Shown here one piece after another: positions 3,809-58,665 of a stretch of DNA of 64,000 nt (positions are counted from its first letter, which is position 1; each line of letters opens with the position of its first letter). The notes below the pieces were generated by a model. The model had not been told where the DNA came from, made no database searches, and saw only the letters and a list, made by a program, of their open reading frames with translations. The stretch is from positions 1-64,000 of the IMG/VR virus record IMGVR_UViG_3300034117_002447. One strand, 5' to 3'. Made by a program: the position numbers and the translations under genes.

Positions 3809-4462
3809 TTACATCATTTCGTCTTCTTCTTCGTTCTCTTCTTCTTCGTTCTCGTCTTCTTCACCTTCTTCAGATTCTTCTTCTAAACAAAGTTTTTTAA
3901 CAGCTGCACAAAGTAGATTGCAAACTTCTTCTTTTTCAATTTCCATCTTTTCAGCGATATCTTCGATCATAGCTTCAAGATCTTCTCCGAAATCAGCCAT
4001 TAGATTTTCTAATTGCTCTTCGTCTACTTCAATTTCTTCTACTTCTGCTCCTTCTTCTGGAGTCTCTTCCATTTCTGGAGCTTCCTCTTCAGCTTCTGCG
4101 AACATGTTATAGCCTTCATTTTCGTTTACGAATTGTTCGAAACGTTTAATTTTTCCTTCTTCAACAGCGTCAACTGTTGCGATTGTTGGTTTTGCGTACA
4201 TAGGGTCAAATGGTTTTTTCTTAGCAGTTCTTGAGATTAAGTCACGAGTTACTGCTTTCCACGTCGTGTCATAATTATGATTGAATTTTCCACCTTCAAA
4301 ATCGGCATTTCTGTCGACTACTCGTTGGTATCCATCAAGTGATTTTCTTTTTGATTTATCAAAGTCTTCCTTCTCTTTGGGACCTCCGAATGCAGGCTTC
4401 TTCAAGTCACTGTATCGATCCATAGAAGGATTATCTCTGCGTTTTACGTTAAACATGTCCAT
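3809..4462 (-). CDS. acidic hypothetical protein, possible internal head protein
   Basis: Glu-rich C-terminus; internal KRFEQFVNE motif. Confidence 0.75.
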   Translation of the reverse strand: MDMFNVKRRDNPSMDRYSDLKKPAFGGPKEKEDFDKSKRKSLDGYQRVVDRNADFEGGKFNHNYDTTWKAVTRDLISRTAKKKPFDPMYAKPTIATVDAVEEGKIKRFEQFVNENEGYNMFAEAEEEAPEMEETPEEGAEVEEIEVDEEQLENLMADFGEDLEAMIEDIAEKMEIEKEEVCNLLCAAVKKLCLEEESEEGEEDENEEEENEEEDEMM

Positions 4463-4483
4463 AGTCAGTTAGCGATGATTTTT

Positions 4484-5068
4484 TTATTGTCCGATTCTAG
4501 ATTCAGTGTACATATCCGCTGTGAATTGTGCGGTTAGTTTATAAATACCGTCTCCTGCGTAATCTAGTGCAGTTTCAGTTAATTTATTTGGTCCAATGAA
4601 TACTGGTGAGAACATAAAGTCTCTGTAAATTACACCAGCTCTATTAAATTGCGTTACTTGAATGCTGGCATCCGCGTAGTCAACTTTTAAACCTTGACGA
4701 CCAGTTAATGGATCGTAAATTAAATCTGCCCATGCTCTTAGTGCATTGTAGATGTACATATCATTATTATTGTTTAAGTTAACCTCAAAATCAATATTAA
4801 ACTGATGATACGTCTGAGCTGGTTTAGCTGGAGCATAAGTTCTTTGAGCGAATTTATAGTTCTGCGTAATTACTGCTGAACCTGAACCTGCAAGCTCTGG
4901 TAAACTAGTTACCTTAAGAACGTGTTCAAGCATTAAGTTGTTACCGAAACCTATTTTACCAGCAACTGCTGGTGGAGGAGTAATAATTACCTCAAATTGA
5001 TTAAGGTACAACGGCTCGTACTTTCCAGGACCGGCTGTTGAGTTTTTAAAATGTGGTAGACCTGCCAT
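4484..5068 (-). CDS. gp19: tail tube protein (gp19-like)
   Basis: EP-Y-NQFEV, W.DLIYDP.TG and F.ADMY patterns typical of T4-like tube proteins; 194 aa; late promoter upstream. Confidence 0.85.
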   Translation of the reverse strand: MAGLPHFKNSTAGPGKYEPLYLNQFEVIITPPPAVAGKIGFGNNLMLEHVLKVTSLPELAGSGSAVITQNYKFAQRTYAPAKPAQTYHQFNIDFEVNLNNNNDMYIYNALRAWADLIYDPLTGRQGLKVDYADASIQVTQFNRAGVIYRDFMFSPVFIGPNKLTETALDYAGDGIYKLTAQFTADMYTESRIGQ

Positions 5069-5087
5069 CTTGTCTCTTATTTTTTAG

Positions 5088-6113: not shown

Positions 6114-6116
6114 TTA

Positions 6117-6422
6117 TTATCCTATTTCTTTTTCGCCTTGGAATTCTTTTCCGCGGTTGGATTTTTTCTTAGTTGGATCAACTGGCTTGTAATTTGCCCA
6201 AATCTCATTATAGATTCGGCATGAAGCTCCCATGAAATTGACAATCCCTACGAATTTCTTACGATCTTCGCCCTTCATACGTGAAATTTTCTTTCCGATG
6301 CTACGTGCATCATCTAAATCCAATTCCTCGTCGTCTGATTTTCCAACTAAATCCTTTATAGAATTCTCTTGAATTACGAACTGTTTAAATGGAGTTAGTC
6401 TGTTTTTATTTTTATCTGACAT
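6117..6422 (-). CDS. hypothetical protein, capsid-targeting-like N-terminus
   Basis: RLTPFKQFVIQE motif; operon context. Confidence 0.75.
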   Translation of the reverse strand: MSDKNKNRLTPFKQFVIQENSIKDLVGKSDDEELDLDDARSIGKKISRMKGEDRKKFVGIVNFMGASCRIYNEIWANYKPVDPTKKKSNRGKEFQGEKEIG

Positions 6423-6442
6423 GGTCGAGATTGATTTTTTAA

Positions 6443-6808
6443 TTACTTAGGCATTTTAGCCATGCTAGGCTCAACTTTCTTATTAATAGCATTTCCTTTA
6501 ATAACGATCTTCGCCATTTTAGAATCTACTACTTTATTAGAAGCCGTACCTTTGCTAGTAGGCAATTTAGAAGTTTTAGTATCAACTGTTTTTGTACTAG
6601 TTGTACCTTTACCTTTAGGAAGACTTGCCATTTCAGGTTTAACAGTTTTATTTGAGTTAGAACCTTTACCTTTAGGAAGTTCTTTCATCTCAGCATTAAC
6701 TGACTTGTTAGATTTAGAACCTTTACCCTTAGGAAGATCTGCCATTTCCTGGTTGATCGCTTTTTTCTCTAAAAGAAATTGTGCGTAATTTAAAACGGTG
6801 TTGCTCAT
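6443..6808 (-). CDS. Lys-rich repeat protein, putative DNA-binding internal head protein
   Basis: VLNYAQFLLE N-terminus, then about five 19-aa repeats (MxxLPKGKGS...); own late promoter at 6845. Confidence 0.75.
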   Translation of the reverse strand: MSNTVLNYAQFLLEKKAINQEMADLPKGKGSKSNKSVNAEMKELPKGKGSNSNKTVKPEMASLPKGKGTTSTKTVDTKTSKLPTSKGTASNKVVDSKMAKIVIKGNAINKKVEPSMAKMPK

Positions 6809-6844: not shown

Positions 6845-6851
6845 TATTTAT
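6845..6851 (-). promoter_or_regulatory. late promoter ATAAATA
   Basis: Lies between the major capsid terminator and the next gene. Confidence 0.7.
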
Positions 6852-6927: not shown

Positions 6928-8595
6928 TTAGTAAGATGCAGAAGGACGAGTAGAACCAGTCAATACACCTAGACCTGTTACGTTCAAGGTAATGTATTGA
7001 GTTTCTGGGTGCCATCCAGCTTCTGTAATAGCATAACGAGACTTCATACCAATTTTCGGAGAGAAAGTTCCCTCTGCGATTGTTTGAAGAGACTCTGCCA
7101 TGATATATGGAAGGAATTTAACACCTGGCTCTTCATCAGCGCCTTTACGACCGATATGGATACGATCGTCGCTGAATTTCAAGTTAGGATCTACGTACAC
7201 AGTTAAACCGTGAACTTTACCTGCAGGGTACAATTGACCAGCAGCAGATGGAAGATCGTTATTGAAAGGAGCGAACGAGTAACCAGCTACGTCTGCTAAA
7301 GCAGAAGCAACACGACCGTTAGTAACGATGTAAGTACCTGCACCGAAACGACCTCTATGATAAATCAAGTTAGCCATTTCAAGGATTTTAGTTACAACAC
7401 GACGTTGTAAAGTTGAGATGTTCTCGAAACCAGTTGAACCTACAGTTAAGTCCAAAGTAGTGATTCCTGCACCTTCAACTGCTGCGATAGCAGTGTTGTG
7501 AACAGAACCTAATTTGAATACACGGTCAACTAATTTTTTGTTGATTGATTGAGCAAGCTCGTTAACTGCTACGTTCTCTAACATAGAGATTACGTCGAAA
7601 TTCCAAACTCGGTTAAGATCTTGGATTTGCTCAACAGTTGCAGAGATAGCAACTTGGTCACCTTTAGCCTCAATGAATTTCGTAAACATACGAAGACCCA
7701 TTTGACGGAATTTAGAAACCTCAGCAACTTCTCTCTTCATTCCTTCGAATGGTAATTGAGAACCTGTGTCGCCTAAGAAAGGACCATCAAATGCAGTTGT
7801 TGCATAATCATCATCACTTACTGAAGTAAATCCAGAGATGTGGTTTTCTAAAGCAGATACCAAAGTAACTGTGTTAGCTGCGAATGCAGTTGTACCTAAA
7901 CCATCGTAAGGATCGCCTGTAGCACCAGTTCCAGAACCGATTGCTGTAGCACTAATTGATGCAAGGAAGTCAGCAACAGTAGTAGCACCATCAGTACCAG
8001 TTACTACTTTAAGGATTGGTTGACCATCAACACGTGATTTTCCAACCAATTGGAATTTCCAATCTGCGTTAGTACCGTCGATGAATTTACCAACTGCGAT
8101 AGATGCGCTGATTGAAGGAACTTTAACCATGAATGGCTCGTATGCTTTATCAGTGTTACCACCTTGGTATACGTAATCCAAATAAGGTAAGAAACCTACT
8201 GGAGAATCCATAGGAACTACACCAACTAGGTCGAAACCGATAGTTTTAGCAGCTACTTGGATAGCTACCGGTAAAAGGCTTGGGAATTTATCACCAGAAC
8301 CTGATGCAGAAGCACCGTAACCGTTTTTTACACCAGCAGATGAGAATGGAGTCATTGAGCTAGTTGGAGCAGAGATTGCACCGATTGAAGAGATAGAACC
8401 TGGTTGTTGTAAGAACAATCCTGGAGCTACCGCTGATTCATTGATTGAACCTGCGTTATCGAAAATTGCGTGGTTGTGAGCGTAGTCTACTAACCAAGGG
8501 CGAGCTTTTACGTCTGCACCGTAACCTTCTAAAACTGGAGTCCAAGTTTCGTTAATTGAAGCGTCGTTCAATTTTTTGAAAATTTTAGTTGCCAT
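6928..8595 (-). CDS. gp23: major capsid protein (gp23-like)
   Basis: W.PVLE N-terminus, DLVGVVPM..P.G motif, YxPY and KSRY motifs, INE processing-type site. Confidence 0.95.
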   Translation of the reverse strand: MATKIFKKLNDASINETWTPVLEGYGADVKARPWLVDYAHNHAIFDNAGSINESAVAPGLFLQQPGSISSIGAISAPTSSMTPFSSAGVKNGYGASASGSGDKFPSLLPVAIQVAAKTIGFDLVGVVPMDSPVGFLPYLDYVYQGGNTDKAYEPFMVKVPSISASIAVGKFIDGTNADWKFQLVGKSRVDGQPILKVVTGTDGATTVADFLASISATAIGSGTGATGDPYDGLGTTAFAANTVTLVSALENHISGFTSVSDDDYATTAFDGPFLGDTGSQLPFEGMKREVAEVSKFRQMGLRMFTKFIEAKGDQVAISATVEQIQDLNRVWNFDVISMLENVAVNELAQSINKKLVDRVFKLGSVHNTAIAAVEGAGITTLDLTVGSTGFENISTLQRRVVTKILEMANLIYHRGRFGAGTYIVTNGRVASALADVAGYSFAPFNNDLPSAAGQLYPAGKVHGLTVYVDPNLKFSDDRIHIGRKGADEEPGVKFLPYIMAESLQTIAEGTFSPKIGMKSRYAITEAGWHPETQYITLNVTGLGVLTGSTRPSASY

Positions 8596-8612: not shown

Positions 8613-10634
8613 TTAGTTTTGTGCTTTTCTTTTAAGCATGTCTATGTAAGTATTTGAATAGCCTCTTAAGCTTTCGTGTACTTGATTTAACGACACATAA
8701 CCTTCTTTACCTTGGCTTTCGTTAATAGTGTTATTATTTATAATAGTCTCTGTTGCAATTCTTTCATTAATTCCTCTGAAGTCACGAGAATCCCAGAAAG
8801 ATTTAACTTGATATGCTGAATTAAGAACTAGTGTGTTTGCTTGAGCAGCAACCCAATTTCTTTCTCCTTCAGTCATACTTTCAAATACATTTTTGTAAGC
8901 AGCTGGCATAAATTTAATATAGTTAGGAGTGTTTTCAACCTGTTTGTTAAGAACTGCCTCCATGATATTAACTACCTCTTCTTCATTAAAGTAGATTGCT
9001 CCTCTAAGAGTTTCAACGATTGCGGTTTTAGTAGGTTGATCTAACTTGTAAAATGCTTGTTTACGGCCTTCGCTTAACAATTTTAAGAAAGGATATTTAC
9101 CTTCTAGAACTGCGTTTGCTGAATTAGATTTAATATGTGTTAAGATACCGTCTACTGCACCAACTAGGTCATCTACTGTAGAAGTTTCACTGATTTCAAA
9201 TTCAACACCTTCGTTTAATTTCTTAACTTCTCCAAGTAGAGAACGAGTCTTAGCTGTTGCTCCTGGAAGAACTTTTTCATTAAGTGATTCTGCGATATAC
9301 TCAGAGTATTTAATACCTTTATTTAAGTTTTCACCTAAGTAATCAGAATATTTAATAGCGGCTTCTAAGTTTTCAGCGATATAGTTAGAATAGTGGATTC
9401 CTTTTTCTGCATTTTCTCCAACGTATTCAGCGTATTGAATTCCTCTATCAACGTTCTCAGCTAAGTAATTAGTGTATTCGATAGTTTTTTCAACGTTTTC
9501 TGCAACGTATTCAGAGTAGTTAATGTTTTGGTTAACTTTTTCTCCTAAGTATTCAGAATACTGGATATTCTTTTCAACTTTTTCTCCTAAGTAGTCAGAA
9601 TAGTCAATAACATTATTAACTTTTTCTGCAACGTGCTCAGTGTAGTTGATACCTTTTCCTAACATTGCTGATAGGTAGTTAGAATATTCAACTAACTGCT
9701 CCATTTCACCTGCTAGGTAATTAACGTATTCTACCATTTTAGCAACTACTGGAGATTCACCAGCTGTGCTTTCGCTGATCTGCTTAAGACCTTTATTGTT
9801 TTTTGAAATACTCTCTTGTAAAGTTGAGAATTTCTTCTTAACCAATTCAGAGTATTGGTTCATTTCATCTTTTGTTACAAACTCATTAGCCATTTGCTGT
9901 GTATTATTTTGTTGGGTTGGAATTTCAGAATTATTTATTTTATAAATCTTTACAGAATCTGCAAAGTTGAAATTTTCAGAAATATCTGTTAGTTTGCTAG
10001 TTATAGCAGTTGTCTTTAGTGTATCCAATGATTCAAAGATAGAAGCAAAGTTACCTTGTAAACTTTCAGACACTTGACTTAATGATGCTTGAGAGAAACC
10101 AGGTTCTGCTACTAAATCATAAGTAAAGATTTTATGCAACTTAACTTTTCCGTTTTCAGAAACGTTACCTGCTGCTCTTGATGAAACTGCTGTTGTGCAA
10201 CCAGCTTCAACTAAGGTCTTAGCGATCTTTCCACAAGGAGTATCAAGAAGACGAAGTCTAATCTTTACGCTATTTGAACCTTCATCGTAAGTAAGTCCTT
10301 CTACTACGTGAGATACGTTAGCTAAAGAAACATCAAATTTTTGTGGGTGATCAAGTTCACCAAAGAGTCTGCGCTCTTCGATCTTCTTTTTTAGGTATTC
10401 TAGATGAGGTAAATACTCCTGTTTTTCGTAAACTCGATTATTCTCGTTCATTACTCCAAAAACAGCGGCAGTACCTTCAAGGATAATGTCGTTATCTTCT
10501 CTAGTTACAGTGACAGCTTCGTTGATTTTCTCAATAATGAATACTGAGTTGTCAGGAACAGATGTCTTGTTCAAACTTTGTATTTTAGGATTAGCCAATT
10601 GTATCAGACTTTTTTGATTATTTATACGCGCCAC
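8613..10634 (-). CDS. gp21: prohead protease fused to scaffold/core domain (gp21+gp22-like); true start probably TTG at 10598 or 10574
   Basis: N.NNRVY, GELDHP, VSH, VSSRAAG and TYDLVAEPGF protease motifs, followed by about eleven 14-aa helical repeats. TATAAATA at 10619-10626 lies inside the ORF-track 5' end. Confidence 0.9.
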   Translation of the reverse strand: MARINNQKSLIQLANPKIQSLNKTSVPDNSVFIIEKINEAVTVTREDNDIILEGTAAVFGVMNENNRVYEKQEYLPHLEYLKKKIEERRLFGELDHPQKFDVSLANVSHVVEGLTYDEGSNSVKIRLRLLDTPCGKIAKTLVEAGCTTAVSSRAAGNVSENGKVKLHKIFTYDLVAEPGFSQASLSQVSESLQGNFASIFESLDTLKTTAITSKLTDISENFNFADSVKIYKINNSEIPTQQNNTQQMANEFVTKDEMNQYSELVKKKFSTLQESISKNNKGLKQISESTAGESPVVAKMVEYVNYLAGEMEQLVEYSNYLSAMLGKGINYTEHVAEKVNNVIDYSDYLGEKVEKNIQYSEYLGEKVNQNINYSEYVAENVEKTIEYTNYLAENVDRGIQYAEYVGENAEKGIHYSNYIAENLEAAIKYSDYLGENLNKGIKYSEYIAESLNEKVLPGATAKTRSLLGEVKKLNEGVEFEISETSTVDDLVGAVDGILTHIKSNSANAVLEGKYPFLKLLSEGRKQAFYKLDQPTKTAIVETLRGAIYFNEEEVVNIMEAVLNKQVENTPNYIKFMPAAYKNVFESMTEGERNWVAAQANTLVLNSAYQVKSFWDSRDFRGINERIATETIINNNTINESQGKEGYVSLNQVHESLRGYSNTYIDMLKRKAQN
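10619..10626 (-). promoter_or_regulatory. late promoter TATAAATA for the head operon
   Basis: Exact T4 gp55 consensus. Confidence 0.75.
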
Positions 10635-10662: not shown

Positions 10663-11568
10663 TTATTTATTAATGCTAATCAGTAAGTCTTTGAATTCCT
10701 TTAACTTTTCTTCACTTAATTTCGAAAAGTCCGGACGGTTCACAATTATTTTAAAGAGATGGCTTCCTCTTTTACCAAATGCGGATACGAGTCCTTGGTT
10801 GGGTATCTTAACTACTAAGTCACTAAGTGAATCCCGGTTAAATGATTTTATTCTGTACTTTTTACCCAATGGGCTCTCTAAAATGACTTCTTCATTAAAC
10901 AAAATATCATATAGGCTGATCTCAATCTCTTGAACTAGATCACTATCTTCAAGTTCAAGGCCCAGCATATCAACATTTATGCGAATAATTAAATCGCCAA
11001 CCACATTGCCTGCCCGCTTTCTGTTAAAGTAATCGACTTCCTCAGTTTCCTGACTGGACCCTCCTCCTCTGACTTTTAGGACTAAAAAATATTTACCGTT
11101 TTCAAAAGAAATTGGATAAGGGTTAATTGCTAAATTAACTTCTGCTCTAATTTGCTTGTCTTCGAACTTTAATGCACCGTCTTTTGACTTTTTTGATATC
11201 GGGTATCCAATATCAAATACCGAACCGTCCATTAATTCTTTGATGGTTGCCCATTTGTCAACAGTAACCGTTAAGTGCCTAAAGTCTTGAGTTCTTGCTC
11301 CAGAGAAAGAGAAATCATGAAACGACCCAAAGAATTCCGAATTAAATGAAGAATTTTTAGGTGCCCGGGCAGAATCGTATACTCGTTTCTTATCTTCTGA
11401 TCCAATATGTTCATACGCCTCAGCTACTTCTTTGAATTTTTCTTCAAATTCTTTACTTCCACCATTTTTGTCAGGGTGGTATTTAGAAGCAAGCTTTCTG
11501 TAAGCTTTCTTTATTTCAGCAGAGTCCGCTGTTTCGGGAACTTCGAGAATTTTATAATAATTTTTCAA
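10663..11568 (-). CDS. dnaJ: DnaJ-family co-chaperone (J domain plus C-terminal domain, no Zn finger)
   Basis: YYKILEV...[17 protein letters not shown] (HPD motif); GDLII and IPNQGL C-terminal motifs. Confidence 0.9.
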
Positions 11569-36790: not shown

Positions 36791-36861
36791 GTTTTCAACT
36801 TTTTAGTTATTTATTTGGTAAATTAAACCCAAATGAATATTCACAAGTACAATACTCGTAT

Positions 36862-44550: not shown

Positions 44551-44916
44551 TTATGCAGTCTTAGTAGCCTTTGCTTTCTGCTCAGCTTGTTGTTCAATCT
44601 GCTTGATTTTAGTCAATAGCTGAATCTTTTCTGCATCAGTTGCAGCAGCTGCGACTTGGTCCCTAAGTGCTTTGGTCTGATTAATTATATCGATCTGTGC
44701 TTGAGTATCAGCTGAGCTCTCTTGAATAGGAGTTTTAGATACTTTCGTGTAATCAGGCTCAGTTACCTTAACTTGAGATAGATCAGCACTCTTAACTTGA
44801 TCAATTGTTTTTTCTTTCTTAACTTGATCAGGTTTTGAGGCCGTTGCATGTTTCTTGGGATCGCTTAAGTTAGACCCTTTATGAAAATCGTCGAAGTTTA
44901 AAATTTTGTTACTCAT
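44551..44916 (-). CDS. hypothetical protein
   Basis: KILNFDDF N-terminus; coiled-coil C-terminus. Confidence 0.7.
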   Translation of the reverse strand: MSNKILNFDDFHKGSNLSDPKKHATASKPDQVKKEKTIDQVKSADLSQVKVTEPDYTKVSKTPIQESSADTQAQIDIINQTKALRDQVAAAATDAEKIQLLTKIKQIEQQAEQKAKATKTA

Positions 44917-44931: not shown

Positions 44932-45189
44932 TTATTTATTAGATTCCATATACTCGTTAAATCGTAGGACTTTATAAACTCTAGGATTTGAGCCGATTCT
45001 GGATGGAGTCGAATTAGTTGTCATATCTCGCTTAGAATACGGCGCTGTATTCAACCAGTGCTGAGGAAGCCCACCCACAGCCACATTTACTGGAGTAGGT
45101 TGAATATTCATATCAGTTCTTTGTTGAAATGAACTGGCTGGTACAGTAATTTCACCAGATGACATTTTATTATTATGTGGATTGTCCAT
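44932..45189 (-). CDS. hypothetical protein
   Basis: C-terminal KVLRFNEYME; late promoter at 45196-45202. Confidence 0.7.
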   Translation of the reverse strand: MDNPHNNKMSSGEITVPASSFQQRTDMNIQPTPVNVAVGGLPQHWLNTAPYSKRDMTTNSTPSRIGSNPRVYKVLRFNEYMESNK

Positions 45190-45269: not shown

Positions 45270-46238
45270 TTAAGCTTTAGTAAAAATAGCTTTGCCTAAT
45301 GCTCCGCCTAGTTCAATAACATTACTTCCTTCTTTTTTAACAAGTGCAGCAATTTCGCTTTCATCAAAGTCTTTAGTTTGTCCTTTACTATCAGTTACCG
45401 TATAGTAATTTCCCATCCAACCTTCTTTTGGACCGTCTATGTGTTGAATAATGATAGGGCCGCTGTAGATCGGAGACTTCACCGTTACTTTATATGGGGT
45501 TTTTCCTACATATACTACGTATTTACTCGCATCTGGTGTTACCCATTTTCCTCCAGCCTTTGGATATTGAATAGCTCTTTCGTTAATCGGCTCTTCCACA
45601 TCAACCTCAGCCGCTGCTTCCATCATACACTTACTCATGTACGAGCCAACTTCATTTAAGTAATTCTCGTATGTATGGTTAGGATCTGCGTCTTCATCGC
45701 ACATTTGAGCCTCTTTAATTAGAATTTCTTCGCATACTGATTTAACTGCATTCTGTGCTTCTTCTGACATTGCTGGGCTGTAGCCTTCGGTCATTGGTGA
45801 CCAACACTCATTAACGAAATTTTCAAATGTGTTAGAAGCTTTACCTTCAGTATCCTCTTTCGACTTATTAAGTAATTTAAAATCGCCTGAATCAATTTTT
45901 CCATTTCGATTCTTATCTAAGTTCTTTTGTTTACCTTTAAGTTTTTCGTCAATTTCATCAGATACAACTTCAAGTTCTACTGGAATAGAGTACTCATGAT
46001 CTCCGTGCATTGCCGTTAGCATGCCGTTACCGTCATAGTCGAATCTAAGCTCAAGCTCTTCACCTGATTTACTTCTAATAACGATCATTGCATGGTCGTC
46101 TCCATGATCTCCCAATGAAACTATTTCTACTGGATGCATTTCATCCAAATTTTCATCAGCTACTCTTGGATTAGCGCCAATTGCATCTTCTTTACCTTTC
46201 ATGAAATTAGGCACTCTGTTTTTACCAAATCTTCCCAT
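45270..46238 (-). CDS. multidomain hypothetical protein with EF-hand-like loop
   Basis: LDKNRNGKIDSGDF; internal TFENFVNE; late promoter at 46259-46265. Confidence 0.7.
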   Translation of the reverse strand: MGRFGKNRVPNFMKGKEDAIGANPRVADENLDEMHPVEIVSLGDHGDDHAMIVIRSKSGEELELRFDYDGNGMLTAMHGDHEYSIPVELEVVSDEIDEKLKGKQKNLDKNRNGKIDSGDFKLLNKSKEDTEGKASNTFENFVNECWSPMTEGYSPAMSEEAQNAVKSVCEEILIKEAQMCDEDADPNHTYENYLNEVGSYMSKCMMEAAAEVDVEEPINERAIQYPKAGGKWVTPDASKYVVYVGKTPYKVTVKSPIYSGPIIIQHIDGPKEGWMGNYYTVTDSKGQTKDFDESEIAALVKKEGSNVIELGGALGKAIFTKA

Positions 46239-53176: not shown

Positions 53177-53473
53177 TTAGAATCCGCCGTTTTCGTCGGT
53201 GTGTGCTTCAATATCGTTAGCTGATGTTTCAACTTCAATATTAGGTTCATTGTCAGAAGTTCCTTCTTCTGAATCATCTTGCATGTGGTTTGGAACGTTG
53301 TGTTCAGTTTCTCCGCCTTCTACTTCTTCAGCTGGTGCTGGTAATAGTGCTTGATCTTCTCCGCCCTGTGGCATTTCAGCAGTATGGTCCATTTCGTGGC
53401 CCATTTCCTGACCCATTTCGCCTGTTCCTTGTTGAACGAATTCTTCGAAACTTAAAATTTTATTATTATGCAT
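53177..53473 (-). CDS. acidic low-complexity protein, capsid-targeting-like N-terminus
   Basis: KILSFEEFVQQ; late promoter at 53494-53500. Confidence 0.7.
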   Translation of the reverse strand: MHNNKILSFEEFVQQGTGEMGQEMGHEMDHTAEMPQGGEDQALLPAPAEEVEGGETEHNVPNHMQDDSEEGTSDNEPNIEVETSANDIEAHTDENGGF

Positions 53474-53507
53474 TTGTTTGAATAATTTGAGTTTATTTAT
53501 CTGTATA

Positions 53508-54487: not shown

Positions 54488-55384
54488 TTAAGCGATTGCT
54501 TTAAGTGAAATAGGTTCAGCAGTTCTCTTATCGTATACGTAAAGTGAATCTGCGATTTTTGTCTTTACCCAGTCCCCATTTTCTCCAATTGGGAGCTCGA
54601 CTGTATCTCCAGGATTTAGAGTTTTGGCAATCTTTCTGCCATCCGGTAAAATAATTCCCAATTTCAAGAATCGGTCTTCTCTAAAAGAATCACGGTTTAG
54701 GACACCATCAATTGTGCATTCAGTGAACTCTTTTAGGAATGGAATAAACACCTTAATTTTTCTACCAGCTGCGACTGAGTATTGTTGTTCTCCGCTAATA
54801 ACTGCTGGAGTATAGGCAGCTCTTCTTTCTGGGATTACTTGACCGTCTTCTGTAAGTTCAAATACGCTATTTACTGTCTCTTCTGGTAATTCATATACGG
54901 TAACTGATCCAGTTTTACCCTTTCTAGAAAGATGATTTTCCAAATCCATTTGAATATCTTTATGAGACATTCTGTGAGGGAGCACCTTGATTGTTGTAAG
55001 AACATCATCTGAAATATAGGCGAAAACTCGCTCGCCGATGTGAATTTTTTCAATCTCTCCACTAAATGATTTTACAGACATTGTTACTGGATAAGAGGTA
55101 CCCTCTATCTTTAAGAATGGTGCAACTACTGGTAGGGCTTTATGGCCTGATGGAAATTGAGTTCTCTCAATATGGTCTTGGCTCTTTTTAAATTCAGATT
55201 TAATAGCATCAATGAGTTGAGAGTAGACTTCGTTTATTTCAAATCCAGCTTCTCGAATAAATTGTCTCGCTGGCTTAGGTAAGTTAATTGACTCTAGATT
55301 ATAGATTCGTTGATCTATACGACCCTCTCCGTGAGAAGAGATTCGGGCTTCAGTTATGAATTGTGTAAATTTAAGTAACTTCAA
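54488..55384 (-). CDS. hypothetical protein, capsid-targeting-like N-terminus
   Basis: LLKFTQFITE; TATAAATA at 55408-55415. Confidence 0.75.
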   Translation of the reverse strand: MKLLKFTQFITEARISSHGEGRIDQRIYNLESINLPKPARQFIREAGFEINEVYSQLIDAIKSEFKKSQDHIERTQFPSGHKALPVVAPFLKIEGTSYPVTMSVKSFSGEIEKIHIGERVFAYISDDVLTTIKVLPHRMSHKDIQMDLENHLSRKGKTGSVTVYELPEETVNSVFELTEDGQVIPERRAAYTPAVISGEQQYSVAAGRKIKVFIPFLKEFTECTIDGVLNRDSFREDRFLKLGIILPDGRKIAKTLNPGDTVELPIGENGDWVKTKIADSLYVYDKRTAEPISLKAIA

Positions 55385-55423
55385 AATTAATCATTCTATT
55401 TGAAGTTTATTTATACGACTCGA

Positions 55424-55678
55424 CTACTTCCCTACGTATTCTGAAGGCAGATCTGCAGGTTTAAATACTCTACAGAAACCAAAATGGACCCATCGATTAA
55501 GGAAATCTACTGAGTATTCCTGCTTGTCGGTAGTGACCATTCCATTAATTGGATCGCTTGAGCCCTTAATTATAGTTTCATTAGGTTTGTCCTTTCTAGA
55601 AAAGACTATGATATTACCCTTTTTTAAATTTGCCATGTTGATTAAGTTAAGTACCCCAGGAGGGATTCGAACCCCCAT
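55424..55678 (-). CDS. hypothetical protein; true start likely ATG (MANLKKG) at 55636
   Basis: The ORF-track 5' end overlaps tRNA-Arg(ACG). Confidence 0.55.
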   Translation of the reverse strand: MGVRIPPGVLNLINMANLKKGNIIVFSRKDKPNETIIKGSSDPINGMVTTDKQEYSVDFLNRWVHFGFCRVFKPADLPSEYVGK

Positions 55679-55724
55679 CTCACGGTCCGTAGCCGTGTGT
55701 TCTGATCCATTGAACTACCGGGGC
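55652..55724 (-). tRNA. trnR-ACG: tRNA-Arg(ACG)
   Basis: GCCCCGG/CTGGGGT acceptor; CACGG-CT-ACG-GA-CCGTG anticodon arm; TTCGAAT T-loop; no encoded CCA. Confidence 0.93.
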
Positions 55725-55733
55725 AGGTACTAA

Positions 55734-55964
55734 TTAGTTTCGGTTATGTGCAGCTTTCCAGCGCTCTTGCAGACCTTCCCAGTAGCCACTTTCGTTTTGA
55801 AAACGTTGAACCACTTGAACATCTTCGGGAAAACCTAGTGCAAGCTTAGCCTGATTACGAATATCAGCCTTCATAATTGTCTGAATCAAGGCTGTGTGAA
55901 ACGATCCAGCTGTTCCAATCTTATAGAACATGAATTCTCTTTCTGCGTTTGTTATTTCTTCCAT
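55734..55964 (-). CDS. small conserved phage protein within the tRNA array
   Basis: GSFHTALI.....AD..N..KL..GFPE pattern; TAGTACAATA upstream. Confidence 0.7.
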   Translation of the reverse strand: MEEITNAEREFMFYKIGTAGSFHTALIQTIMKADIRNQAKLALGFPEDVQVVQRFQNESGYWEGLQERWKAAHNRN

Positions 55965-55988
55965 AGCTATATTGTACTAAATAATTTG

Positions 55989-56062
55989 TAATCCAGGCAG
56001 GACTCGAACCTGCGACCTACCGCTTAGAAGGCGGTTGCTCTATTCCACTGAGCTACTGGACT
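55989..56062 (-). tRNA. trnR-TCT: tRNA-Arg(TCT)
   Basis: AGTCCAG/CTGGATT acceptor; ACCGC-CT-TCT-AA-GCGGT. Confidence 0.93.
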
Positions 56063-56063
56063 A

Positions 56064-56151
56064 TGGCGGAGAGTGGAGGTCTCGATCCCCATTCCCTTTC
56101 GGGAACCGCTCGCTTAGCAGGCGGCGACAACACCTTGTTGCTTCACTCTCC
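56064..56151 (-). tRNA. trnS-GCT: tRNA-Ser(GCT), non-canonical (8/4) fold
   Basis: GGAGAGTG/CACTCTCC 8-bp acceptor, 5-bp D stem, CT-GCT-AA loop, long variable arm, 4-bp T stem with ATCGAGA loop, G73, CCA encoded. Confidence 0.85.
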
Positions 56152-56156
56152 ATTAG

Positions 56157-56237
56157 TACTCCCGGTGGGACTCGAACCCACAAGCATTGCGCACTCGATC
56201 TTAAGCCGAGCGTGTTTACCAGTTTCACCACGGGAGC
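56157..56237 (-). tRNA. trnL-TAA: tRNA-Leu(TAA)
   Basis: GCTCCCG/CGGGAGT acceptor; CTCGG-CT-TAA-GA-TCGAG; variable arm; A73. Confidence 0.93.
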
Positions 56238-56244
56238 ATTTTTG

Positions 56245-56320
56245 TACCTCTGGTGGGATTCGAACCCACAAAATCTCTTGATCCTAAGTCAAGCGGCTTT
56301 ACCAGTTTACCCACAGAGGC
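56245..56320 (-). tRNA. trnL-TAG: tRNA-Leu(TAG) with very short variable region
   Basis: GCCTCTG/CAGAGGT acceptor; CTTGA-CT-TAG-GA-TCAAG; variable region only AGATTTT. Confidence 0.88.
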
Positions 56321-56323
56321 AGT

Positions 56324-56401
56324 TGGGGTAAACGATCGGGATCGAACCGACGACCTCCTGAACCACAATCAGGCGCTCTAACCAACTGAGCTACGTCTAC
56401 C
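56324..56401 (-). tRNA. trnH-GTG: tRNA-His(GTG)
   Basis: G-1 and C73; CCTGA-TT-GTG-GT-TCAGG; CCA encoded. Confidence 0.95.
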
Positions 56402-56416
56402 ATGTAAAAGAACGAG

Positions 56417-56500
56417 CGGAAGAGTGAGGTATCGATCCCCATACCCGAAGGTACCACTAGTTTTCAAGACTAGGTCCAGCGCCAGCTGAATTACTCTTCC
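56417..56500 (-). tRNA. trnS-TGA: tRNA-Ser(TGA), likely (8/4) fold
   Basis: GGAAGAGT/ACTCTTCC; CTAGT-CT-TGA-AA-ACTAG; GTACC-TTCG-GGTAT variable arm; GGGG-ATCGATA-CCTC T arm; G73. Confidence 0.9.
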
Positions 56501-56508
56501 AGTTTTTG

Positions 56509-56578
56509 AGGTCAATGTTGGAATCGAACCAACTCCTCAGATTTTGCAGACCTGACGGCCTCCACGACCAAACTGACC
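56509..56578 (-). tRNA. trnC-GCA: tRNA-Cys(GCA)
   Basis: GGTCAGT/ATTGACC acceptor; CAGGT-CT-GCA-AA-ATCTG; U73; compact D arm. Confidence 0.92.
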
Positions 56579-56580
56579 AA

Positions 56581-56616: not shown

Positions 56617-56640
56617 CAGTAGAAGTTTTCTTATCTTACA

Positions 56641-56712: not shown

Positions 56713-56717
56713 GTTAA

Positions 56718-56727
56718 TAATATACTA
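56718..56727 (-). promoter_or_regulatory. early-type promoter motif TAGTATATTA driving leader and tRNA array
   Basis: Identical 10-mer at 32605, 52695 and 61987; variants at 11593, 36845, 48266, 49617 and 55970. A late-type ATAAATA is also present at 56747-56753. Confidence 0.7.
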
Positions 56728-56749
56728 CAATATTTCTAATTGGTTTTAT

Positions 56750-58081
56750 TTATTCTTTTCTTTTTGCTAATTTTCTTTTAACTGCTTCCCGAGTCGACTC
56801 CATTTTCTTGGCATAACTTGGATTTTTTCGCTTGTTAAAATTAATTTGTTGATTTAGCGATCCAGTAATCTTTTGCATGTTACCACCTCTTGTTCTGATT
56901 AACCAATCCGCTAATTTATTAACTCCAAGGTCTCTGAATTTTCCATTTGCATCAGGTGCATCAGAATCGTGCCATTTAAGTTTTTTCTTTTCTGAAATTT
57001 CATCTTCATCAGCTTCATCATCTTCTTCGTCATCCCATCTGTGATACTGTTCCTCAATTGCCTTATTTAAAAGATCTTGAATTTTGTCGTACATTCCAAG
57101 CGAGTCTTCGAAACCAGTTACGGCACTCATAAAGAGTTCAATATCTTCAGCTATCTCATTAGACTTCATTGAAACTGGATCTCCATTTTGGAATAGGTCA
57201 GACCATTCATAGTCTTCAAGTTCAGCATCTTCGTAAAGTCCGATATCTTTTTGTGCGACACTAACTGACGACTTAACAGTTTCATCGATAAAGTTTATTC
57301 TGACTTCAAAATCAGTCCATACGTCTCTTTCTATATCCGGATATTCGGATGAATCTATTCCGTAATCATCTATAGATTGATTGAACTGGCCTGAAACAAT
57401 AACGATTTGATCTTCTGCAGTTGCTCCATTGACTAGTTCTGCGATTGCATCAGTGTCAACTCCACCAAAACCCATTGCTCTTAGTTCTGCAGCTTCTTCA
57501 TCAGATAAGTTCTCAATTATGAATTTTCCTTTTGTGTTAGGCTCATCAGAATCATGCCATTTAAGTTTCTTCTTTTCTGATACTTCTCCAAGACGTCTAT
57601 CGATTATGTCATTTACTATATCGACTGCCATGTCTACAAACATGCCTTCGTATTCAATTCGCTGCAAAATCTGAGTTAACTCATCAGCGATTCCTTGAGA
57701 ATCGTGATTTTCTGAATCCAGTTTAAAATCAACTTCATACGCATTACCTGCACCGTCAAAATCAATCCCAGAATTTAAGACTGCCACTTGTACTTTAGAT
57801 TTCATTGTCTCAAAGTCGAAATCAACATAGTACTGAACAAGGAACACGCTATCTAATTCAGCAGCCTCTGCTCTTTCTGGATCAAGTCCTAAATCATCAG
57901 CTGTCATATCAAATCCCAAATCGAAACCTAATGTCGTGTCGGTCTTCTCCTCTGGGTTGTATTCGGCCATTAATCCTTGAATTTCATCCGTGTCAATCTT
58001 TGAATTAAAACCTAATGCTGCTAATTCTTCAGCATCATCAGTATTTTCATTAACGAATTGTGTAAATCGTTTAAGTCTCAT
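56750..58081 (-). CDS. very acidic modular protein, capsid-targeting-like N-terminus
   Basis: LKRFTQFVNE; two acidic domains each preceded by ELxA(L/M)GF and each followed by SEKKKLKWHDSD. Confidence 0.75.
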   Translation of the reverse strand: MRLKRFTQFVNENTDDAEELAALGFNSKIDTDEIQGLMAEYNPEEKTDTTLGFDLGFDMTADDLGLDPERAEAAELDSVFLVQYYVDFDFETMKSKVQVAVLNSGIDFDGAGNAYEVDFKLDSENHDSQGIADELTQILQRIEYEGMFVDMAVDIVNDIIDRRLGEVSEKKKLKWHDSDEPNTKGKFIIENLSDEEAAELRAMGFGGVDTDAIAELVNGATAEDQIVIVSGQFNQSIDDYGIDSSEYPDIERDVWTDFEVRINFIDETVKSSVSVAQKDIGLYEDAELEDYEWSDLFQNGDPVSMKSNEIAEDIELFMSAVTGFEDSLGMYDKIQDLLNKAIEEQYHRWDDEEDDEADEDEISEKKKLKWHDSDAPDANGKFRDLGVNKLADWLIRTRGGNMQKITGSLNQQINFNKRKNPSYAKKMESTREAVKRKLAKRKE

Positions 58082-58665
58082 TATCCTGGGAAATTGTCTA
58101 GTGCTGCATCAACTTCATCCATTAAGTCCGGTCTTGCTCTCTGAATTGCTCCAGCGATTGAGCCGACTAAATTAATCAGTTCGTGATATTCTGAATAGGT
58201 ATCGTATGCACTATCGTTATTTTTAATAGAGATAACATCGATCGTTGTATCTTGAATATATGCTAGTAGGGTATCGAAATTTACCTGACTTGCTGAGTAA
58301 ACTCCATCCTCTTCATCTTCGTTATCATAATCTTCAGTTGAGTCAAGGTAATCATTGTACTGTCTGGCCTGACTCACTAGCTCCGCAAGTTCAGCTTGAG
58401 AATCTCCGACCTTGGCTGAAGTTAGGTCTTCGTGAGATATTTTAGTTAGAGCAAAAACTGGAACTTTAACAATATTGCCTTTTGAGTTATGTAATTCAAC
58501 TTTTGCAAAATCGCTATCGATATCAAGCACTTGGCCTTTACCTCGGTATGAGTCAACGTAATTTCCTACATTGATCTCTGGTGAATTGTCATCAGCTAAT
58601 TCCTTTTCTGGATTGTCTAGGAATCTGTCAAGATCAAATTCTTCGTATAGTTTAAGGTGTTTCAT
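58081..58665 (-). CDS. acidic hypothetical protein with KOW/SH3-like segment
   Basis: MKHLKLYEEF; TATAAATA at 58671-58678. Confidence 0.75.
   Translation of the reverse strand: MKHLKLYEEFDLDRFLDNPEKELADDNSPEINVGNYVDSYRGKGQVLDIDSDFAKVELHNSKGNIVKVPVFALTKISHEDLTSAKVGDSQAELAELVSQARQYNDYLDSTEDYDNEDEEDGVYSASQVNFDTLLAYIQDTTIDVISIKNNDSAYDTYSEYHELINLVGSIAGAIQRARPDLMDEVDAALDNFPG

What the first reader, a model, noticed from the sequence alone, without database searches (positions are those of the whole stretch)
3809..58665. About 18 unrelated ORFs share a T4 capsid-targeting-like motif, implying a large packaged protein cargo
A motif [ILV]x(F/Y)xx(F/Y)xxE recurs. At N-termini: RLTPFKQFVIQE (6422), VLNYAQFLLE (6808), VALYEEY (23034), IKPFKAFNE (25144), VKTFENFLE (25583), LHTFSQFILE (35925), ILNFDDF (44916), ILSFEEFVQQ (53473), LLKFTQFITE (55384), LKRFTQFVNE (58081), LKLYEEF (58665). 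Internally or at C-termini: ORFs starting at 4462, 24180, 27142, 31417, 36187, 45189 and 46238. Most sit in units behind ATAAATA late promoters (seen). T4 internal proteins use an MKTYQEFIAE-type capsid-targeting sequence cleaved after Glu by gp21 (established). Inference: many acidic, basic and enzymatic proteins are packaged and possibly ejected into the host, and the C-terminal or internal copies would extend the known targeting rule.
Basis: partly seen in the sequence, partly recalled or inferred. Interest (0 to 1): 0.72.

Follow-up and report, generated by a model that had tools for sequence, protein, structure and literature searches.

The report
Capsid-targeting tags on 39 phage proteins
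A 271-kb freshwater jumbo phage puts a short T4-like "capsid-targeting" tag on the N-terminus of about 39 otherwise unrelated late proteins (11 in this window), which suggests, without proving, that it loads an unusually large and varied protein cargo into its head.

Summary
The N-terminal motif is real and far above chance. A scoring matrix built from it finds 37 N-terminal hits in 323 ORFs, against about 0.5 in three kinds of shuffle. With manual additions the set is 39 proteins genome-wide, 11 of them in the window. Consensus: [ILV]-x-x-[FY]-x-x-[FW]-[VLI]-x-E.

Once the tag is trimmed, the carriers share no BLAST similarity. Conservation is at the peptide level, not the DNA level. 35 of 39 sit in units behind a T4-late-type promoter, RATAAATAAY.

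The four conserved positions are the four T4 CTS residues mapped by mutagenesis (Y4 and F7 for targeting, I8 and E10 for cleavage). The matrix picks T4 ipII and ipIII as its top N-terminal hits in T4.

The phage has a gp23-like capsid protein, a gp21-type protease fused to a scaffold, and a gp55-like late sigma factor. The scaffold carries 11 tandem 14-residue repeats with the same aromatic-xx-aromatic-[LVI]-x-E pattern.

Relatives share the trait. The cultured phage PAU has its own version on about 20 proteins.

Of the seven internal or C-terminal copies claimed, three have support and four are at chance level.

Packaging itself is inferred, not shown. Verdict: a new, greatly expanded variant of a known mechanism.

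The parts
6443..6808 (-). Tagged protein, 121 aa, directly downstream of the capsid gene. N-terminus MSNTVLNYAQFLLE|KK. The rest is basic (pI 10.3) and made of LPKGKGS..K.V repeats, so it is the best candidate for a T4-IP-like internal protein.
   Evidence: 16.5 bits. Orthologs sit right after the MCP in 27 of the 38 distinct sequences aligned, and V5, Y8, E14 and K15 are invariant. Own ATAAATA at -43.
6117..6422 (-). Tagged protein, 101 aa. N-terminus MSDKNKNRLTPFKQFVIQE, with the Glu one place later than in the consensus.
   Evidence: 18.0 bits. Relatives have ...VTSFQSFV[IV]QENSI. It lies in the same unit as 6443..6808.
24197..25144 (-). Tagged protein, 315 aa. N-terminus MQMQNHIKPFKAFNE.
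   Evidence: 15.8 bits. The G001 homolog covers only aa 138-315 and has no tag, so the tagged N-terminal part is an add-on. Late unit from 27832..27838.
25158..25583 (-). Tagged acidic protein, 141 aa. N-terminus MNKIVKTFENFLE.
   Evidence: 17.3 bits. The G001 ortholog keeps VKTFEAFEQD.
35125..35925 (-). Tagged acidic protein, 266 aa. N-terminus MLGKRLHTFSQFILE.
   Evidence: 23.4 bits. The G001 ortholog is 31% identical overall yet keeps VKTFTQFITE.
53177..53473 (-). Tagged, very acidic protein, 98 aa. N-terminus MHNNKILSFEEFVQQ, with Gln where the consensus has Glu.
   Evidence: 17.6 bits. ATAAATA at -27.
54488..55384 (-). Tagged protein, 298 aa, with a TTG start. N-terminus (M)KLLKFTQFITE.
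   Evidence: 18.3 bits. ATAAATA at -30.
56750..58081 (-). Tagged acidic protein, 443 aa. N-terminus MRLKRFTQFVNE.
   Evidence: 26.9 bits. Second gene of the unit that starts at 58665.
58081..58665 (-). Tagged acidic protein, 194 aa. N-terminus MKHLKLYEEFDLD, with Asp in place of the cleavage Glu. In T4, Asp at that position allows targeting but blocks processing.
   Evidence: 17.2 bits. ATAAATA at -12. T4 rule from PMC9026906.
22537..23034 (-). Weak candidate, 165 aa. N-terminus MQKHVALYEEY. It has the aromatic pair only, with no [LVI]xE.
   Evidence: 0.2 bits. No ortholog in G001, G003 or G005.
44551..44916 (-). Weak candidate, 121 aa, basic. N-terminus MSNKILNFDDFHKG. It has the aromatic pair only.
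   Evidence: 1.9 bits, but the G001 ortholog keeps ILKFDDFKKG, 8 of 10 identical. ATAAATA at -23.
3809..4462 (-). 217-aa protein with a basic N-terminal half and a very acidic C-terminal half. It carries a perfect internal tag at aa 105-115, IKRFEQFVNEN (nt 4118..4150). Candidate prohead-core protein; T4 gp67 likewise has an acidic tail.
   Evidence: 29.6 bits, the only outstanding internal hit. The EEG.I.RF.QFVNE block is among the best conserved in 21 full-length orthologs. T4 gp67 sequence.
45270..46238 (-). 322-aa protein with two internal copies: SNTFENFVNEC at aa 135 and NHTYENYLNEV at aa 187.
   Evidence: 10.6 and 12.1 bits. Both are conserved in the G001 homolog. Own ATAAATA at -27.
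25586..27142 (-). 518-aa protein of unknown function with a C-terminal tag-like end, ...KKKKYGVVLGFADFIKEQNNL. It is not the portal.
   Evidence: 10.4 bits, which on its own is chance level. The G001 ortholog is 34% identical and ends ...ILEFSDFINQNN. The portal is at 40800..42482.
8613..10634 (-). Prohead protease fused to a scaffold, 673 aa. The S77 protease domain spans aa 50-176. Eleven tandem 14-aa repeats, consensus x-Y-S-E-Y-[LVI]-[AG]-E-N-v-x-K-x-I, span aa 302-455 (nt 9270..9731).
   Evidence: Peptidase_S77 4e-9 and Peptidase_S80 2.5e-6. GELDHP and VSSRAAG align with the GELNHP and VSSRGLG segments of T4 gp21; I take these to hold the catalytic His and Ser from my own recollection of T4 gp21, which no tool result or paper here confirmed. 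Repeats. Residues 295-452 are predicted as one helix at low confidence.
6928..8595 (-). Major capsid protein, T4 gp23 family. It has a propeptide and an invariant [ILV]-x-E at aa 51-53 (INE|S).
   Evidence: PF07068 1.5e-41. 23% identical to T4 gp23. The site is invariant across 48 relatives.
58671..58677 (-). Example of the late-promoter core ATAAATA (consensus RATAAATAAY). Others serving tagged genes: 6845..6851, 27832..27838, 36808..36814, 44933..44939, 53494..53500, 55408..55414.
   Evidence: Position +7 is A in 61 of 63 sites, and there is no conserved -35 element. A gp55-like late sigma factor lies at genome 241571..241990.

Best explanation
The motif is a capsid (prohead-core) targeting tag of the T4 CTS type.

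Shown:
- A 10-19-residue N-terminal tag is shared by about 39 otherwise unrelated proteins.
- Nearly all of them are in late transcription units.
- The phage has a head-assembly module homologous to that of T4.

Inferred mechanism:
1. The tag forms a short amphipathic helix. Its hydrophobic stripe is [ILV] at -3, an aromatic at 0, an aromatic at +3 and [VLI] at +4. This stripe docks the protein onto the scaffold core while the prohead assembles.
2. The scaffold is fused to the protease and consists of 11 tandem 14-residue units with the same aromatic-xx-aromatic-[LVI]-x-E pattern. A tag would therefore behave like one extra scaffold unit.
3. The S77 protease cuts after the Glu of [VLI]-x-E. 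This breaks the scaffold into short peptides, removes the capsid-protein propeptide (INE|S), and frees the cargo from its tag.
4. The cargo stays in the head with the DNA, and at least part of it is ejected into the next host.

The cargo includes basic repeat proteins like the T4 internal proteins, many acidic proteins, two cell-wall hydrolases (a lysozyme and a VanY-type peptidase), and nucleotide-directed enzymes (NUDIX, 2H phosphoesterase, HAD). This would fit wall penetration and pre-made counter-defence.

Tags with Asp or Gln in place of Glu may be targeted but not cleaved.
For: Strength and position:
- 37 hits against about 0.5 expected, and the hits are almost all at the N-terminus.

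Carriers are unrelated:
- 39 BLAST singletons once the tag is trimmed.
- Different folds carry it: lysozyme, VanY, NUDIX, 2H, HAD.

The tag is a separable add-on:
- The NUDIX domain starts at residue 18.
- The G003 NUDIX ortholog and the G005 nucleotidyltransferase homolog lack the tag.

Selection is on the peptide:
- Codons at conserved positions vary synonymously, and the offset from Met varies from 3 to 11.
- Both aromatics are kept in 16 of 16 ortholog pairs, even at 31% overall identity.

Match to T4:
- The conserved positions equal Y4, F7, I8 and E10 of the T4 CTS (PMC9026906).
- T4 ipII and ipIII are the top N-terminal T4 hits at 16.3 bits.
- T-even internal proteins are described as diverse proteins sharing only a CTS (PMC3012670).

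Machinery is present:
- gp23-like MCP, S77 protease, portal, gp55-like sigma factor.
- An invariant [ILV]xE in the MCP propeptide.

Late expression by proxy:
- 35 of 39 against 97 of 284, p=2e-11.
- Promoter logo RATAAATAAY.

Placement:
- Two tagged genes directly follow the MCP, and others lie among tail and baseplate genes.

Scaffold repeats:
- Same pattern as the tag; class-level permutation p=0.012.
- Present in G000, G001, G002, G004 and G005. Absent in G003 and pT24, which have 1-2 tag hits.

Relatives:
- 24 tagged genes in G001 and 14 in G005.
- PAU has about 20 proteins starting MK[TS][LI]xxL[YF]E. They include its scaffold and both proteins its depositors annotate as 'internal capsid protein'.
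Against: - There is no virion proteome, so no direct evidence of packaging, cleavage or ejection.
- Complex prediction on scaffold plus tag gave 'no answer'.
- The 20-letter profile test of scaffold repeat against tag was not significant (p=0.09). The scaffold link was noticed post hoc and rests on few lineages.
- Only 20 of 39 tags have all four positions in exact register.
- 4 of 39 lack an identifiable late promoter. One of these, the HAD enzyme, sits in an operon that looks early or middle.
- In T4 the matrix also hits proteins that are not CTS carriers: Soc and gp61.1.
- The phage also encodes DnaJ and a ClpB-like ATPase, which could be alternative readers of an N-terminal tag.
- The gene calls and transcription units are my own heuristics.
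Confidence: 0.7

Rival explanations
1. The tag is read by something other than the prohead core. Candidates are the phage's own DnaJ, ClpB-like or GroEL-type chaperones (a folding, unfolding or degradation tag), or a membrane or assembly-site localisation signal. In that case the proteins are not packaged.
For: A DnaJ homolog lies directly upstream of the protease-scaffold gene. A ClpB/ClpA-like ATPase lies at 46276..48258. The N-terminus of T4 gp23 is reported to direct proteins to GroEL (Snyder and Tarkowski 2005, cited in PMC10052503). Enzymes such as HAD and NUDIX have no obvious need to be in a virion.
Against: The four conserved positions match the mapped targeting and cleavage residues of the T4 CTS. 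The tag ends in the protease-type [VLI]xE site, which also occurs in the MCP propeptide and in the scaffold repeats. The PAU proteins annotated as internal capsid proteins carry the PAU version of the tag. The tag is not hydrophobic enough to be a signal peptide or membrane anchor.
Confidence: 0.13
2. The shared N-terminus is a DNA-level or translation-level feature. It could be a mobile 5' cassette of promoter plus first codons spread by recombination, or a by-product of AT-rich or leaderless start-region constraints, with no function as a peptide.
For: All consensus residues (K, I, F, N, E, Q, Y) have AT-rich codons. Several promoters lie only 12-13 nt from the ATG, which implies near-leaderless mRNAs. 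T4-type phages are known to shuffle regulatory cassettes; this last point is my own recollection and was not checked here.
Against: Shuffles that keep each N-terminus's own composition, or the position-specific composition, give about 0.5 hits against 37 observed. Codons at conserved positions differ synonymously (TTT/TTC, GAA/GAG, AAT/AAC), and the promoter-to-ATG and Met-to-motif distances both vary. Conserved internal copies exist. T4, pT24 and G003 have similar GC content but only 1-5 hits at >=8 bits.
Confidence: 0.04
3. The carriers are a single, fast-diverging paralog family whose only surviving similarity is the N-terminus.
For: Many carriers are clustered (101-114 kb and 133-149 kb), small, and without known domains. 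Neighbours 79678..80241 and 80268..80819 have near-identical tags.
Against: There is no pairwise BLAST similarity beyond the tag. Unrelated enzyme folds carry it. Untagged homologs of tagged proteins exist in other phages.
Confidence: 0.05

Closest known systems
T4 capsid targeting sequence (CTS) of IPI, IPII, IPIII and Alt (Mullaney and Black 1996; reviewed in PMC9026906 and PMC3012670)
   Same: Both are extreme N-terminal tags of 10-19 residues. The aromatic pair has i, i+3 spacing (Y4 and F7 in T4) and is followed by [LI]-x-E for a gp21-type protease. Both are shared by otherwise unrelated late proteins. The head module is homologous (gp23, gp21, gp20) and transcription is gp55-type late. 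T4 ipII and ipIII score 16.3 bits on this phage's matrix.
   Different: Scale: 3-5 carriers in T4 against about 39 here, 12% of ORFs. The consensus differs (MK.[IL]K.F.QF[VIL]NE against MKTYQEFIAE). Many carriers are acidic or enzymatic rather than small and basic. The protease is fused to a scaffold built from 11 tag-like repeats. At least one conserved internal copy exists. The MCP is only 23% identical to gp23. Packaging has not been tested.
Propeptide-directed head proteins of phiKZ-like giant phages (phiKZ gp175, SPN3US gp245; PMC5694885, PMC10052503)
   Same: These are jumbo phages that load many proteins (about 50 or more head proteins in SPN3US) and process some of them with an assemblin-fold protease that cuts after Glu. 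The protease here also hits Peptidase_S80.
   Different: There the propeptides are mostly 111-254 residues long, share no short consensus, and are cut at A-x-E in SPN3US. Only about 9 substrates are known in SPN3US. Here the tag is a short, shared, T4-like consensus. The chimallivirus hallmark genes were not looked for here.
N-terminal tag of Sphingomonas (Sphingobacterium) phage PAU: MK[TS][LI]xxL[YF]E(AKLNE)
   Same: PAU belongs to the same broad group of Bacteroidota jumbo phages (MCP 28% identical). About 20 otherwise different proteins share an N-terminal tag ending in Glu, concentrated around the head genes. They include the scaffold and two proteins annotated as 'internal capsid protein'.
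   Different: The consensus is different: one aromatic residue, and an L..L[YF]E pattern. The PAU scaffold carries the tag once at its N-terminus instead of as tandem repeats. I found no paper describing the PAU tag.
Encapsulin cargo-loading peptides (my own knowledge, not checked here)
   Same: A short terminal peptide is enough to load unrelated enzymes into an HK97-fold shell, so it works in a similar way.
   Different: Those peptides are usually C-terminal, bind the shell protein directly, and are not cleaved. There is no scaffold or protease. Not a member of this family.

Membership tests
T4-type capsid targeting sequence (CTS) | Located at the extreme N-terminus, about 10-19 residues long | tested here: met
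   The first aromatic lies at residue 4-12 in 38 of the 39 carriers (0-based offset 3-11 from Met). The exception is the longest-ORF call of 148558..149844, whose probable true start is an internal Met. N-terminal hits 37 against 0.33 expected; internal hits are at chance.
T4-type capsid targeting sequence (CTS) | Targeting residues: two large hydrophobic or aromatic residues spaced i, i+3 (T4 residues 4 and 7) | tested here: met
   38 of 39 carriers have [FYW]xx[FYW]. Kept in 16 of 16 ortholog pairs. T4 mapping from PMC9026906.
T4-type capsid targeting sequence (CTS) | Processing residues: [L/I]-x-E immediately after the second aromatic (T4 residues 8 and 10) | tested here: inconclusive
   20 of 39 carriers have [ILVM]-x-E in exact register. 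Several are shifted by one place (FVIQE, FLE, FNE). Three have Asp and two have Gln. About 8 have no such site.
T4-type capsid targeting sequence (CTS) | The phage encodes a gp21-family prohead protease and a scaffold core | tested here: met
   Peptidase_S77 above its cut-off. The segments matching GELNHP and VSSRGLG of T4 gp21 are conserved; their catalytic role is my recollection, not a tool result. The protease is fused to a helical repeat scaffold.
T4-type capsid targeting sequence (CTS) | Carried by otherwise unrelated proteins | tested here: met
   39 BLAST singletons after trimming, with distinct Pfam folds.
T4-type capsid targeting sequence (CTS) | Carriers are expressed late, together with the head proteins | tested here: met
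   By promoter proxy only: 35 of 39 lie in RATAAATAAY units, and a gp55-like sigma factor is present. Metatranscriptome contigs cover the MCP and the two tagged genes beside it, but these libraries do not prove transcription.
T4-type capsid targeting sequence (CTS) | The tag is sufficient for incorporation into proheads and is removed by the protease | not testable with these tools
   This needs proteomics or fusion experiments. The complex prediction gave no answer.
phiKZ-type long propeptides / inner-body proteins | Long propeptides (>100 aa) without a shared short consensus, cut at small-residue-x-E sites | tested here: not met
   The tags are short and share a consensus, and P3 is [VLI]. 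The comparison comes from PMC5694885 and PMC10052503.
Mobile 5' regulatory cassette (DNA-level repeat) | Nucleotide-level identity extending from the promoter into the first codons | tested here: not met
   Synonymous codon variation and variable spacing. Composition-preserving null models.

The most novel reading that the evidence does not exclude
This clade of freshwater, probably Bacteroidota-infecting jumbo phages has turned the T4 CTS principle into a general cargo-loading system. The scaffold is a tandem array of tag-like helical units fused to the protease. Any protein given a single unit co-assembles with it. About 40 different proteins per genome, 12% of the genes, are thereby packaged and at least partly injected as a ready-made arsenal. 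That arsenal would include wall hydrolases and enzymes that destroy nucleotide signals (Acb1-like 2H phosphoesterase, NUDIX, HAD). If so, the packaged proteome could be read directly from the sequence.
Probability: 0.35. Interest if true: 0.8.

Novelty: new variant of a known kind. Interest (0 to 1): 0.66.

Why it matters
If the tag works as in T4, the set of proteins a jumbo phage carries in its head can be predicted from sequence alone. That would hold for uncultured phages, and for lineages with their own tag dialect such as PAU. It would supply a ready list of candidate injected host-takeover and anti-defence proteins, most of which are currently ORFans. It would show that packaging of diverse cargo through a short portable tag is ancient and widespread in the T4 superfamily, and can be scaled up about ten-fold. 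The scaffold built of tag-like repeats points to a concrete and testable receptor for the CTS, which is still undefined in T4. Such tags could also serve to load foreign proteins into Bacteroidota phage capsids.

Tried and rejected
- Megablast of 12 kb against GenBank phages found no match.
- Complex prediction of the protease-scaffold with the first 40 residues of the tagged basic protein, using my own alignments A1 and A2, scored 0.00, 'no answer'. It is not evidence either way.
- The 20-letter profile-profile test of tag against scaffold repeat gave p=0.09. Only the 8-class version reached p=0.012, so the scaffold-mimicry idea remains a suggestion.
- Pfam and PHROGs scans of the window's tagged proteins gave no informative family.
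- I asked whether the internal tag in 3809..4462 is a recent gene fusion. It is not: the full-length architecture is conserved in about 40 relatives.
- I asked whether 25586..27142, with its C-terminal copy, is the portal. It is not: the portal is 40800..42482.
- Metatranscriptome contigs at 95-99% likeness cover the MCP, the scaffold, the tail tube, 3809..4462 and the two tagged genes next to the MCP. They give no transcript ends and cannot prove transcription.
- An all-against-all clustering of N-termini timed out. It was replaced by a class-pattern count.
- I rejected composition or codon bias, a paralog family and a DNA cassette as explanations (see the rival explanations).

Full report
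**What the window is.** The window is bases 1-64000 of a 271,290-bp IMG/VR virus record. CheckV rates it 100% complete, and it has a 126-bp terminal overlap. GC content is about 37%. The same sequence recurs in many lake-water metagenomes from 2016 to 2024.

No close GenBank phage exists. By capsid protein, the nearest records are an uncultured huge phage (LR756500.1, 37%), the Prevotella Lak phages (32-38%), Tenacibaculum phage pT24 (31%), Flavobacterium phage MaF61 (29%), Sphingomonas phage PAU (28%) and Chryseobacterium phage MA9V-1 (27%). PAU's host is in fact a Sphingobacterium (PMC3738902). This is therefore a jumbo-phage lineage that probably infects Bacteroidota and has a distant T4-type head.

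The T4-type head module is present:
- A gp23-family capsid protein at 6928..8595 (PF07068 1.5e-41; 23% identical to T4 gp23).
- A 673-aa protein at 8613..10634 whose N-terminal part is a Peptidase_S77 (gp21) domain. Its GELDHP and VSSRAAG segments align with GELNHP and VSSRGLG of T4 gp21. I take these segments to hold the catalytic His and Ser from my own recollection of T4 gp21.
- A T4-type portal at 40800..42482.
- Tail tube and baseplate-hub genes in the window.
- A gp55-like late sigma factor at genome position 241571..241990 (phrog_234, 1e-16).

**Checking the observation.** I called 323 ORFs with a crude caller (first ATG, longest ORF, greedy non-overlap) and inspected all N-termini. The motif proved much more widespread than reported.

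An iterated position matrix settles on the consensus M-K-x-[IL]-K-x-[FY]-[ES]-[QE]-[FW]-[VLI]-N-E-[NSA].

Significance tests:
- Scoring without the Met-proximal columns gives 37 N-terminal hits at >=10 bits. Whole-protein shuffles give 0.33.
- Shuffling each protein's own first 26 residues gives 0.49. Column shuffles that keep position-specific N-terminal composition give 0.52.
- The matrix was trained on the same data, so I added two independent checks. The regex [FYW]xx[FYW][ILVM]xE gives 18 hits against 0.9 expected. A blind count of all class patterns at positions 0, 3, 4 and 6 ranks 'aromatic..aromatic-aliphatic.E' first in this genome and in relative G001 (18 against 2.7 and 18 against 2.2). 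It is not among the top four patterns listed for G003, pT24 or T4.

Internal positions as a whole are at chance: 9 hits at >=10 bits, against 4.1 in shuffled and 8 in reversed proteins.

With four manual additions, the set is 39 proteins genome-wide, 11 of them in the window. The additions are three borderline cases and one TTG-start gene. Nine of the 11 window cases are strong. ORF starts 23034 and 44916 keep only the aromatic pair.

**Internal and C-terminal copies.**
- The ORF starting at 4462 (3809..4462) has a perfect internal copy, IKRFEQFVNEN at aa 105, scoring 29.6 bits. It is not a fusion artefact. About 40 relatives have the same 215-aa architecture, and EEG.I.RF.QFVNE is one of its best-conserved blocks. 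The protein has a basic N-terminal half and a very acidic tail. In that respect it resembles the T4 core protein gp67.
- The ORF starting at 46238 has two copies, FENFVNE and YENYLNE, both conserved in G001.
- The ORF starting at 27142 ends in ...VLGFADFIKEQNNL. This is chance level on its own, but its 34%-identical G001 ortholog ends in ...ILEFSDFINQNN.
- The ORFs starting at 24180, 31417, 36187 and 45189 score <=6.5 bits and are not distinguishable from chance.

**Is it a peptide signal?**
- After the tag is trimmed, the 39 proteins give no pairwise BLASTP hit at E<1e-3.
- Those with recognisable domains belong to unrelated folds. Phage_lysozyme, VanY and NUDIX score above their Pfam cut-offs. 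A 2H/Acb1-like phosphoesterase scores just below its cut-off but has HTTL and HATI motifs. There is also a weak HAD match with a DLDGV motif and a weak nucleotidyltransferase match.
- The tag is an add-on. The NUDIX domain starts at residue 18. The NUDIX ortholog in G003 and the nucleotidyltransferase homolog in G005 start directly with the domain.
- At the conserved positions codons vary synonymously. The distances from promoter to ATG and from Met to motif also vary.
- In 16 ortholog pairs, both aromatics are kept in all 16, even where overall identity is 31%. Identity is 55% in the tag against 42% in the next 30 residues.

These results argue against a paralog family, a DNA cassette or a composition artefact.

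**Late expression.** ATAAATA occurs 96 times in the genome. 67 of these lie within 100 nt upstream of a same-strand start, although only 8% of the genome is non-coding. The logo is RATAAATAAY with no -35 element, as in T4 late promoters.
- 20 of 38 tagged genes against 42 of 285 others have it directly upstream (p=7e-7).
- Counting tight operons, the figures are 35 of 39 against 97 of 284 (p=2e-11).

Metatranscriptome contigs from lake samples (95-99% alike) cover the capsid gene, the two tagged genes next to it, 3809..4462, the tail tube and the scaffold. Such contigs do not prove transcription.

**Link to the T4 CTS.** According to the review of L. W. Black's work (PMC9026906), only the first 10 residues of IPIII (MKTYQEFIAE) are needed for packaging. 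Residues 4 and 7 matter for targeting, and residues 8 and 10 for processing at L/I-x-E. Asp at position 10 blocks processing but not targeting. Those four residues (Y, F, I, E) fall exactly on the four conserved positions here.

Applied to the whole T4 genome, my matrix ranks ipII and ipIII top among N-termini at 16.3 bits. It also hits Soc and gp61.1, which are probably false positives. The T4 head review describes T-even internal proteins as a diverse set of proteins sharing only a CTS that loads them into the scaffolding core (PMC3012670). That is the same logic on a ten-fold smaller scale.

The capsid protein here has an invariant [ILV]-x-E (INE|S, aa 51-53) in an otherwise variable linker across 48 relatives. 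T4 gp23 has LTE at residues 63-65; from my own recollection that is its maturation site.

**A possible receptor.** Residues 302-455 of the protease-scaffold protein are 11 tandem 14-residue units, for example NYSEYVAENVEKTI. They carry the same aromatic-xx-aromatic-[LVI]-x-E-[NS] pattern as the tag. AlphaFold predicts residues 295-452 as one long helix, at low confidence, as would be expected for a coiled-coil monomer. The scaffold holds 8 of the 32 internal matches to the class regex in the whole proteome.

A column-permutation test gives p=0.09 with 20 letters and p=0.012 with 8 residue classes. This is suggestive, and it was noticed post hoc.

Across lineages, the repeats are present in G000, G001, G002, G004 and G005. 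They are absent in G003 and pT24. Tag counts were made for five of these. G000, G001 and G005 have 39, 24 and 14 tagged genes; G003 and pT24 have 1-2. In T4, the N-terminus of scaffold gp22 (MLKEQLIAEAQ) resembles the CTS. In PAU the scaffold itself starts with the PAU tag.

My working model is that the tag is one scaffold unit. It co-assembles with the scaffold, and the fused protease then cuts at every [VLI]-x-E. A complex prediction gave no answer.

**Relatives.**
- The gene right after the capsid gene is a basic LPKGKGS-repeat protein with a conserved VL[NS]Y.[EQ][FY]L[LF]EKK start in 27 of the 38 distinct sequences aligned. It is the best candidate for a T4-IP-like internal protein.
- PAU has about 20 proteins starting MK[TS][LI]xxL[YF]E(AKLNE), concentrated around its head genes. 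They include the scaffold gp152, and gp142 and gp154, the two proteins its depositors annotate as 'internal capsid protein'.
- I found no paper describing either tag set.

**Verdict.** The motif is real, N-terminal, selected at the peptide level and tied to late genes. It is best explained as a T4-type capsid-targeting tag used on an unusually large scale (confidence about 0.7). Scaffold mimicry is a plausible mechanism (about 0.4). Packaging, cleavage and ejection remain untested.

**Caveats.** The gene calls and operon definitions are heuristic. The matrix is partly circular, which I mitigated as described above. The phyletic correlation rests on few genomes.

Noticed in passing
window 8613..10634 (repeats at 9270..9731): The prohead protease is fused to the scaffold in one 673-aa protein. 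It contains 11 tandem 14-residue helical repeats (42-nt period at DNA level). The architecture is conserved in more than 20 relatives.
   Followed up: yes
window 10663..11568; 46276..48258: The phage encodes a DnaJ homolog directly upstream of the protease-scaffold gene, and a ClpB/ClpA-like AAA+ ATPase (phrog_4871, 1e-250). By eye only, GroEL-like and GroES-like ORFs lie at about 243.8 kb and 258.8 kb of the genome; these were not checked with a tool.
   Followed up: partly
window, e.g. 58671..58677, 27832..27838, 29549..31417 upstream: Many RATAAATAAY late promoters sit only 12-13 nt from the ATG. This implies leaderless or near-leaderless late mRNAs. Promoter-to-ATG distances fall into two groups, about 12-13 and about 24-35 nt.
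   Followed up: partly
window 6928..8595 (MCP aa 64-80) and 25586..27142 (aa about 465-485): A similar segment, PGSI..[MI]GAI..PT, occurs in the capsid-protein propeptide/linker and near the C-terminus of the 518-aa protein of unknown function. This may be a second shared recognition element.
   Followed up: no
window 55651..56578 and 62462..62542: A cluster of six tRNA genes (Arg x2, Leu x2, His, Cys) plus one further tRNA-Leu lies between tagged genes.
   Followed up: partly
T4 record NC_000866: 18966..19130 (gp61.1) and 104117.. (gp22): T4 gp61.1, a 54-aa hypothetical protein next to the primase gene, starts MKTFKEFIKED and is CTS-like. The T4 scaffold gp22 starts MLKEQLIAEAQ, which resembles the CTS MKTYQEFIAEA.
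   Followed up: no
Tenacibaculum phage pT24 (LC168164.1), whole genome: The class pattern [LIVM]xx[FYW][LIVM]xE is over-represented at pT24 N-termini (16 against 5.6 expected). This may be a third tag dialect.
   Followed up: no
window 58081..58665; genome 111834..112148, 112157..112738: A subset of tags has Asp where the cleavage Glu should be (FDLD, FDND, FQD). In T4 that change allows targeting but blocks processing, so these proteins may keep their tag.
   Followed up: no
genome 101.7-114.5 kb and 132.6-149.9 kb (outside the window): There are two dense clusters of tagged genes, 11 within about 13 kb and 8 within about 17 kb. They resemble the hyperplastic internal-protein loci of T-even phages.
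   Followed up: partly
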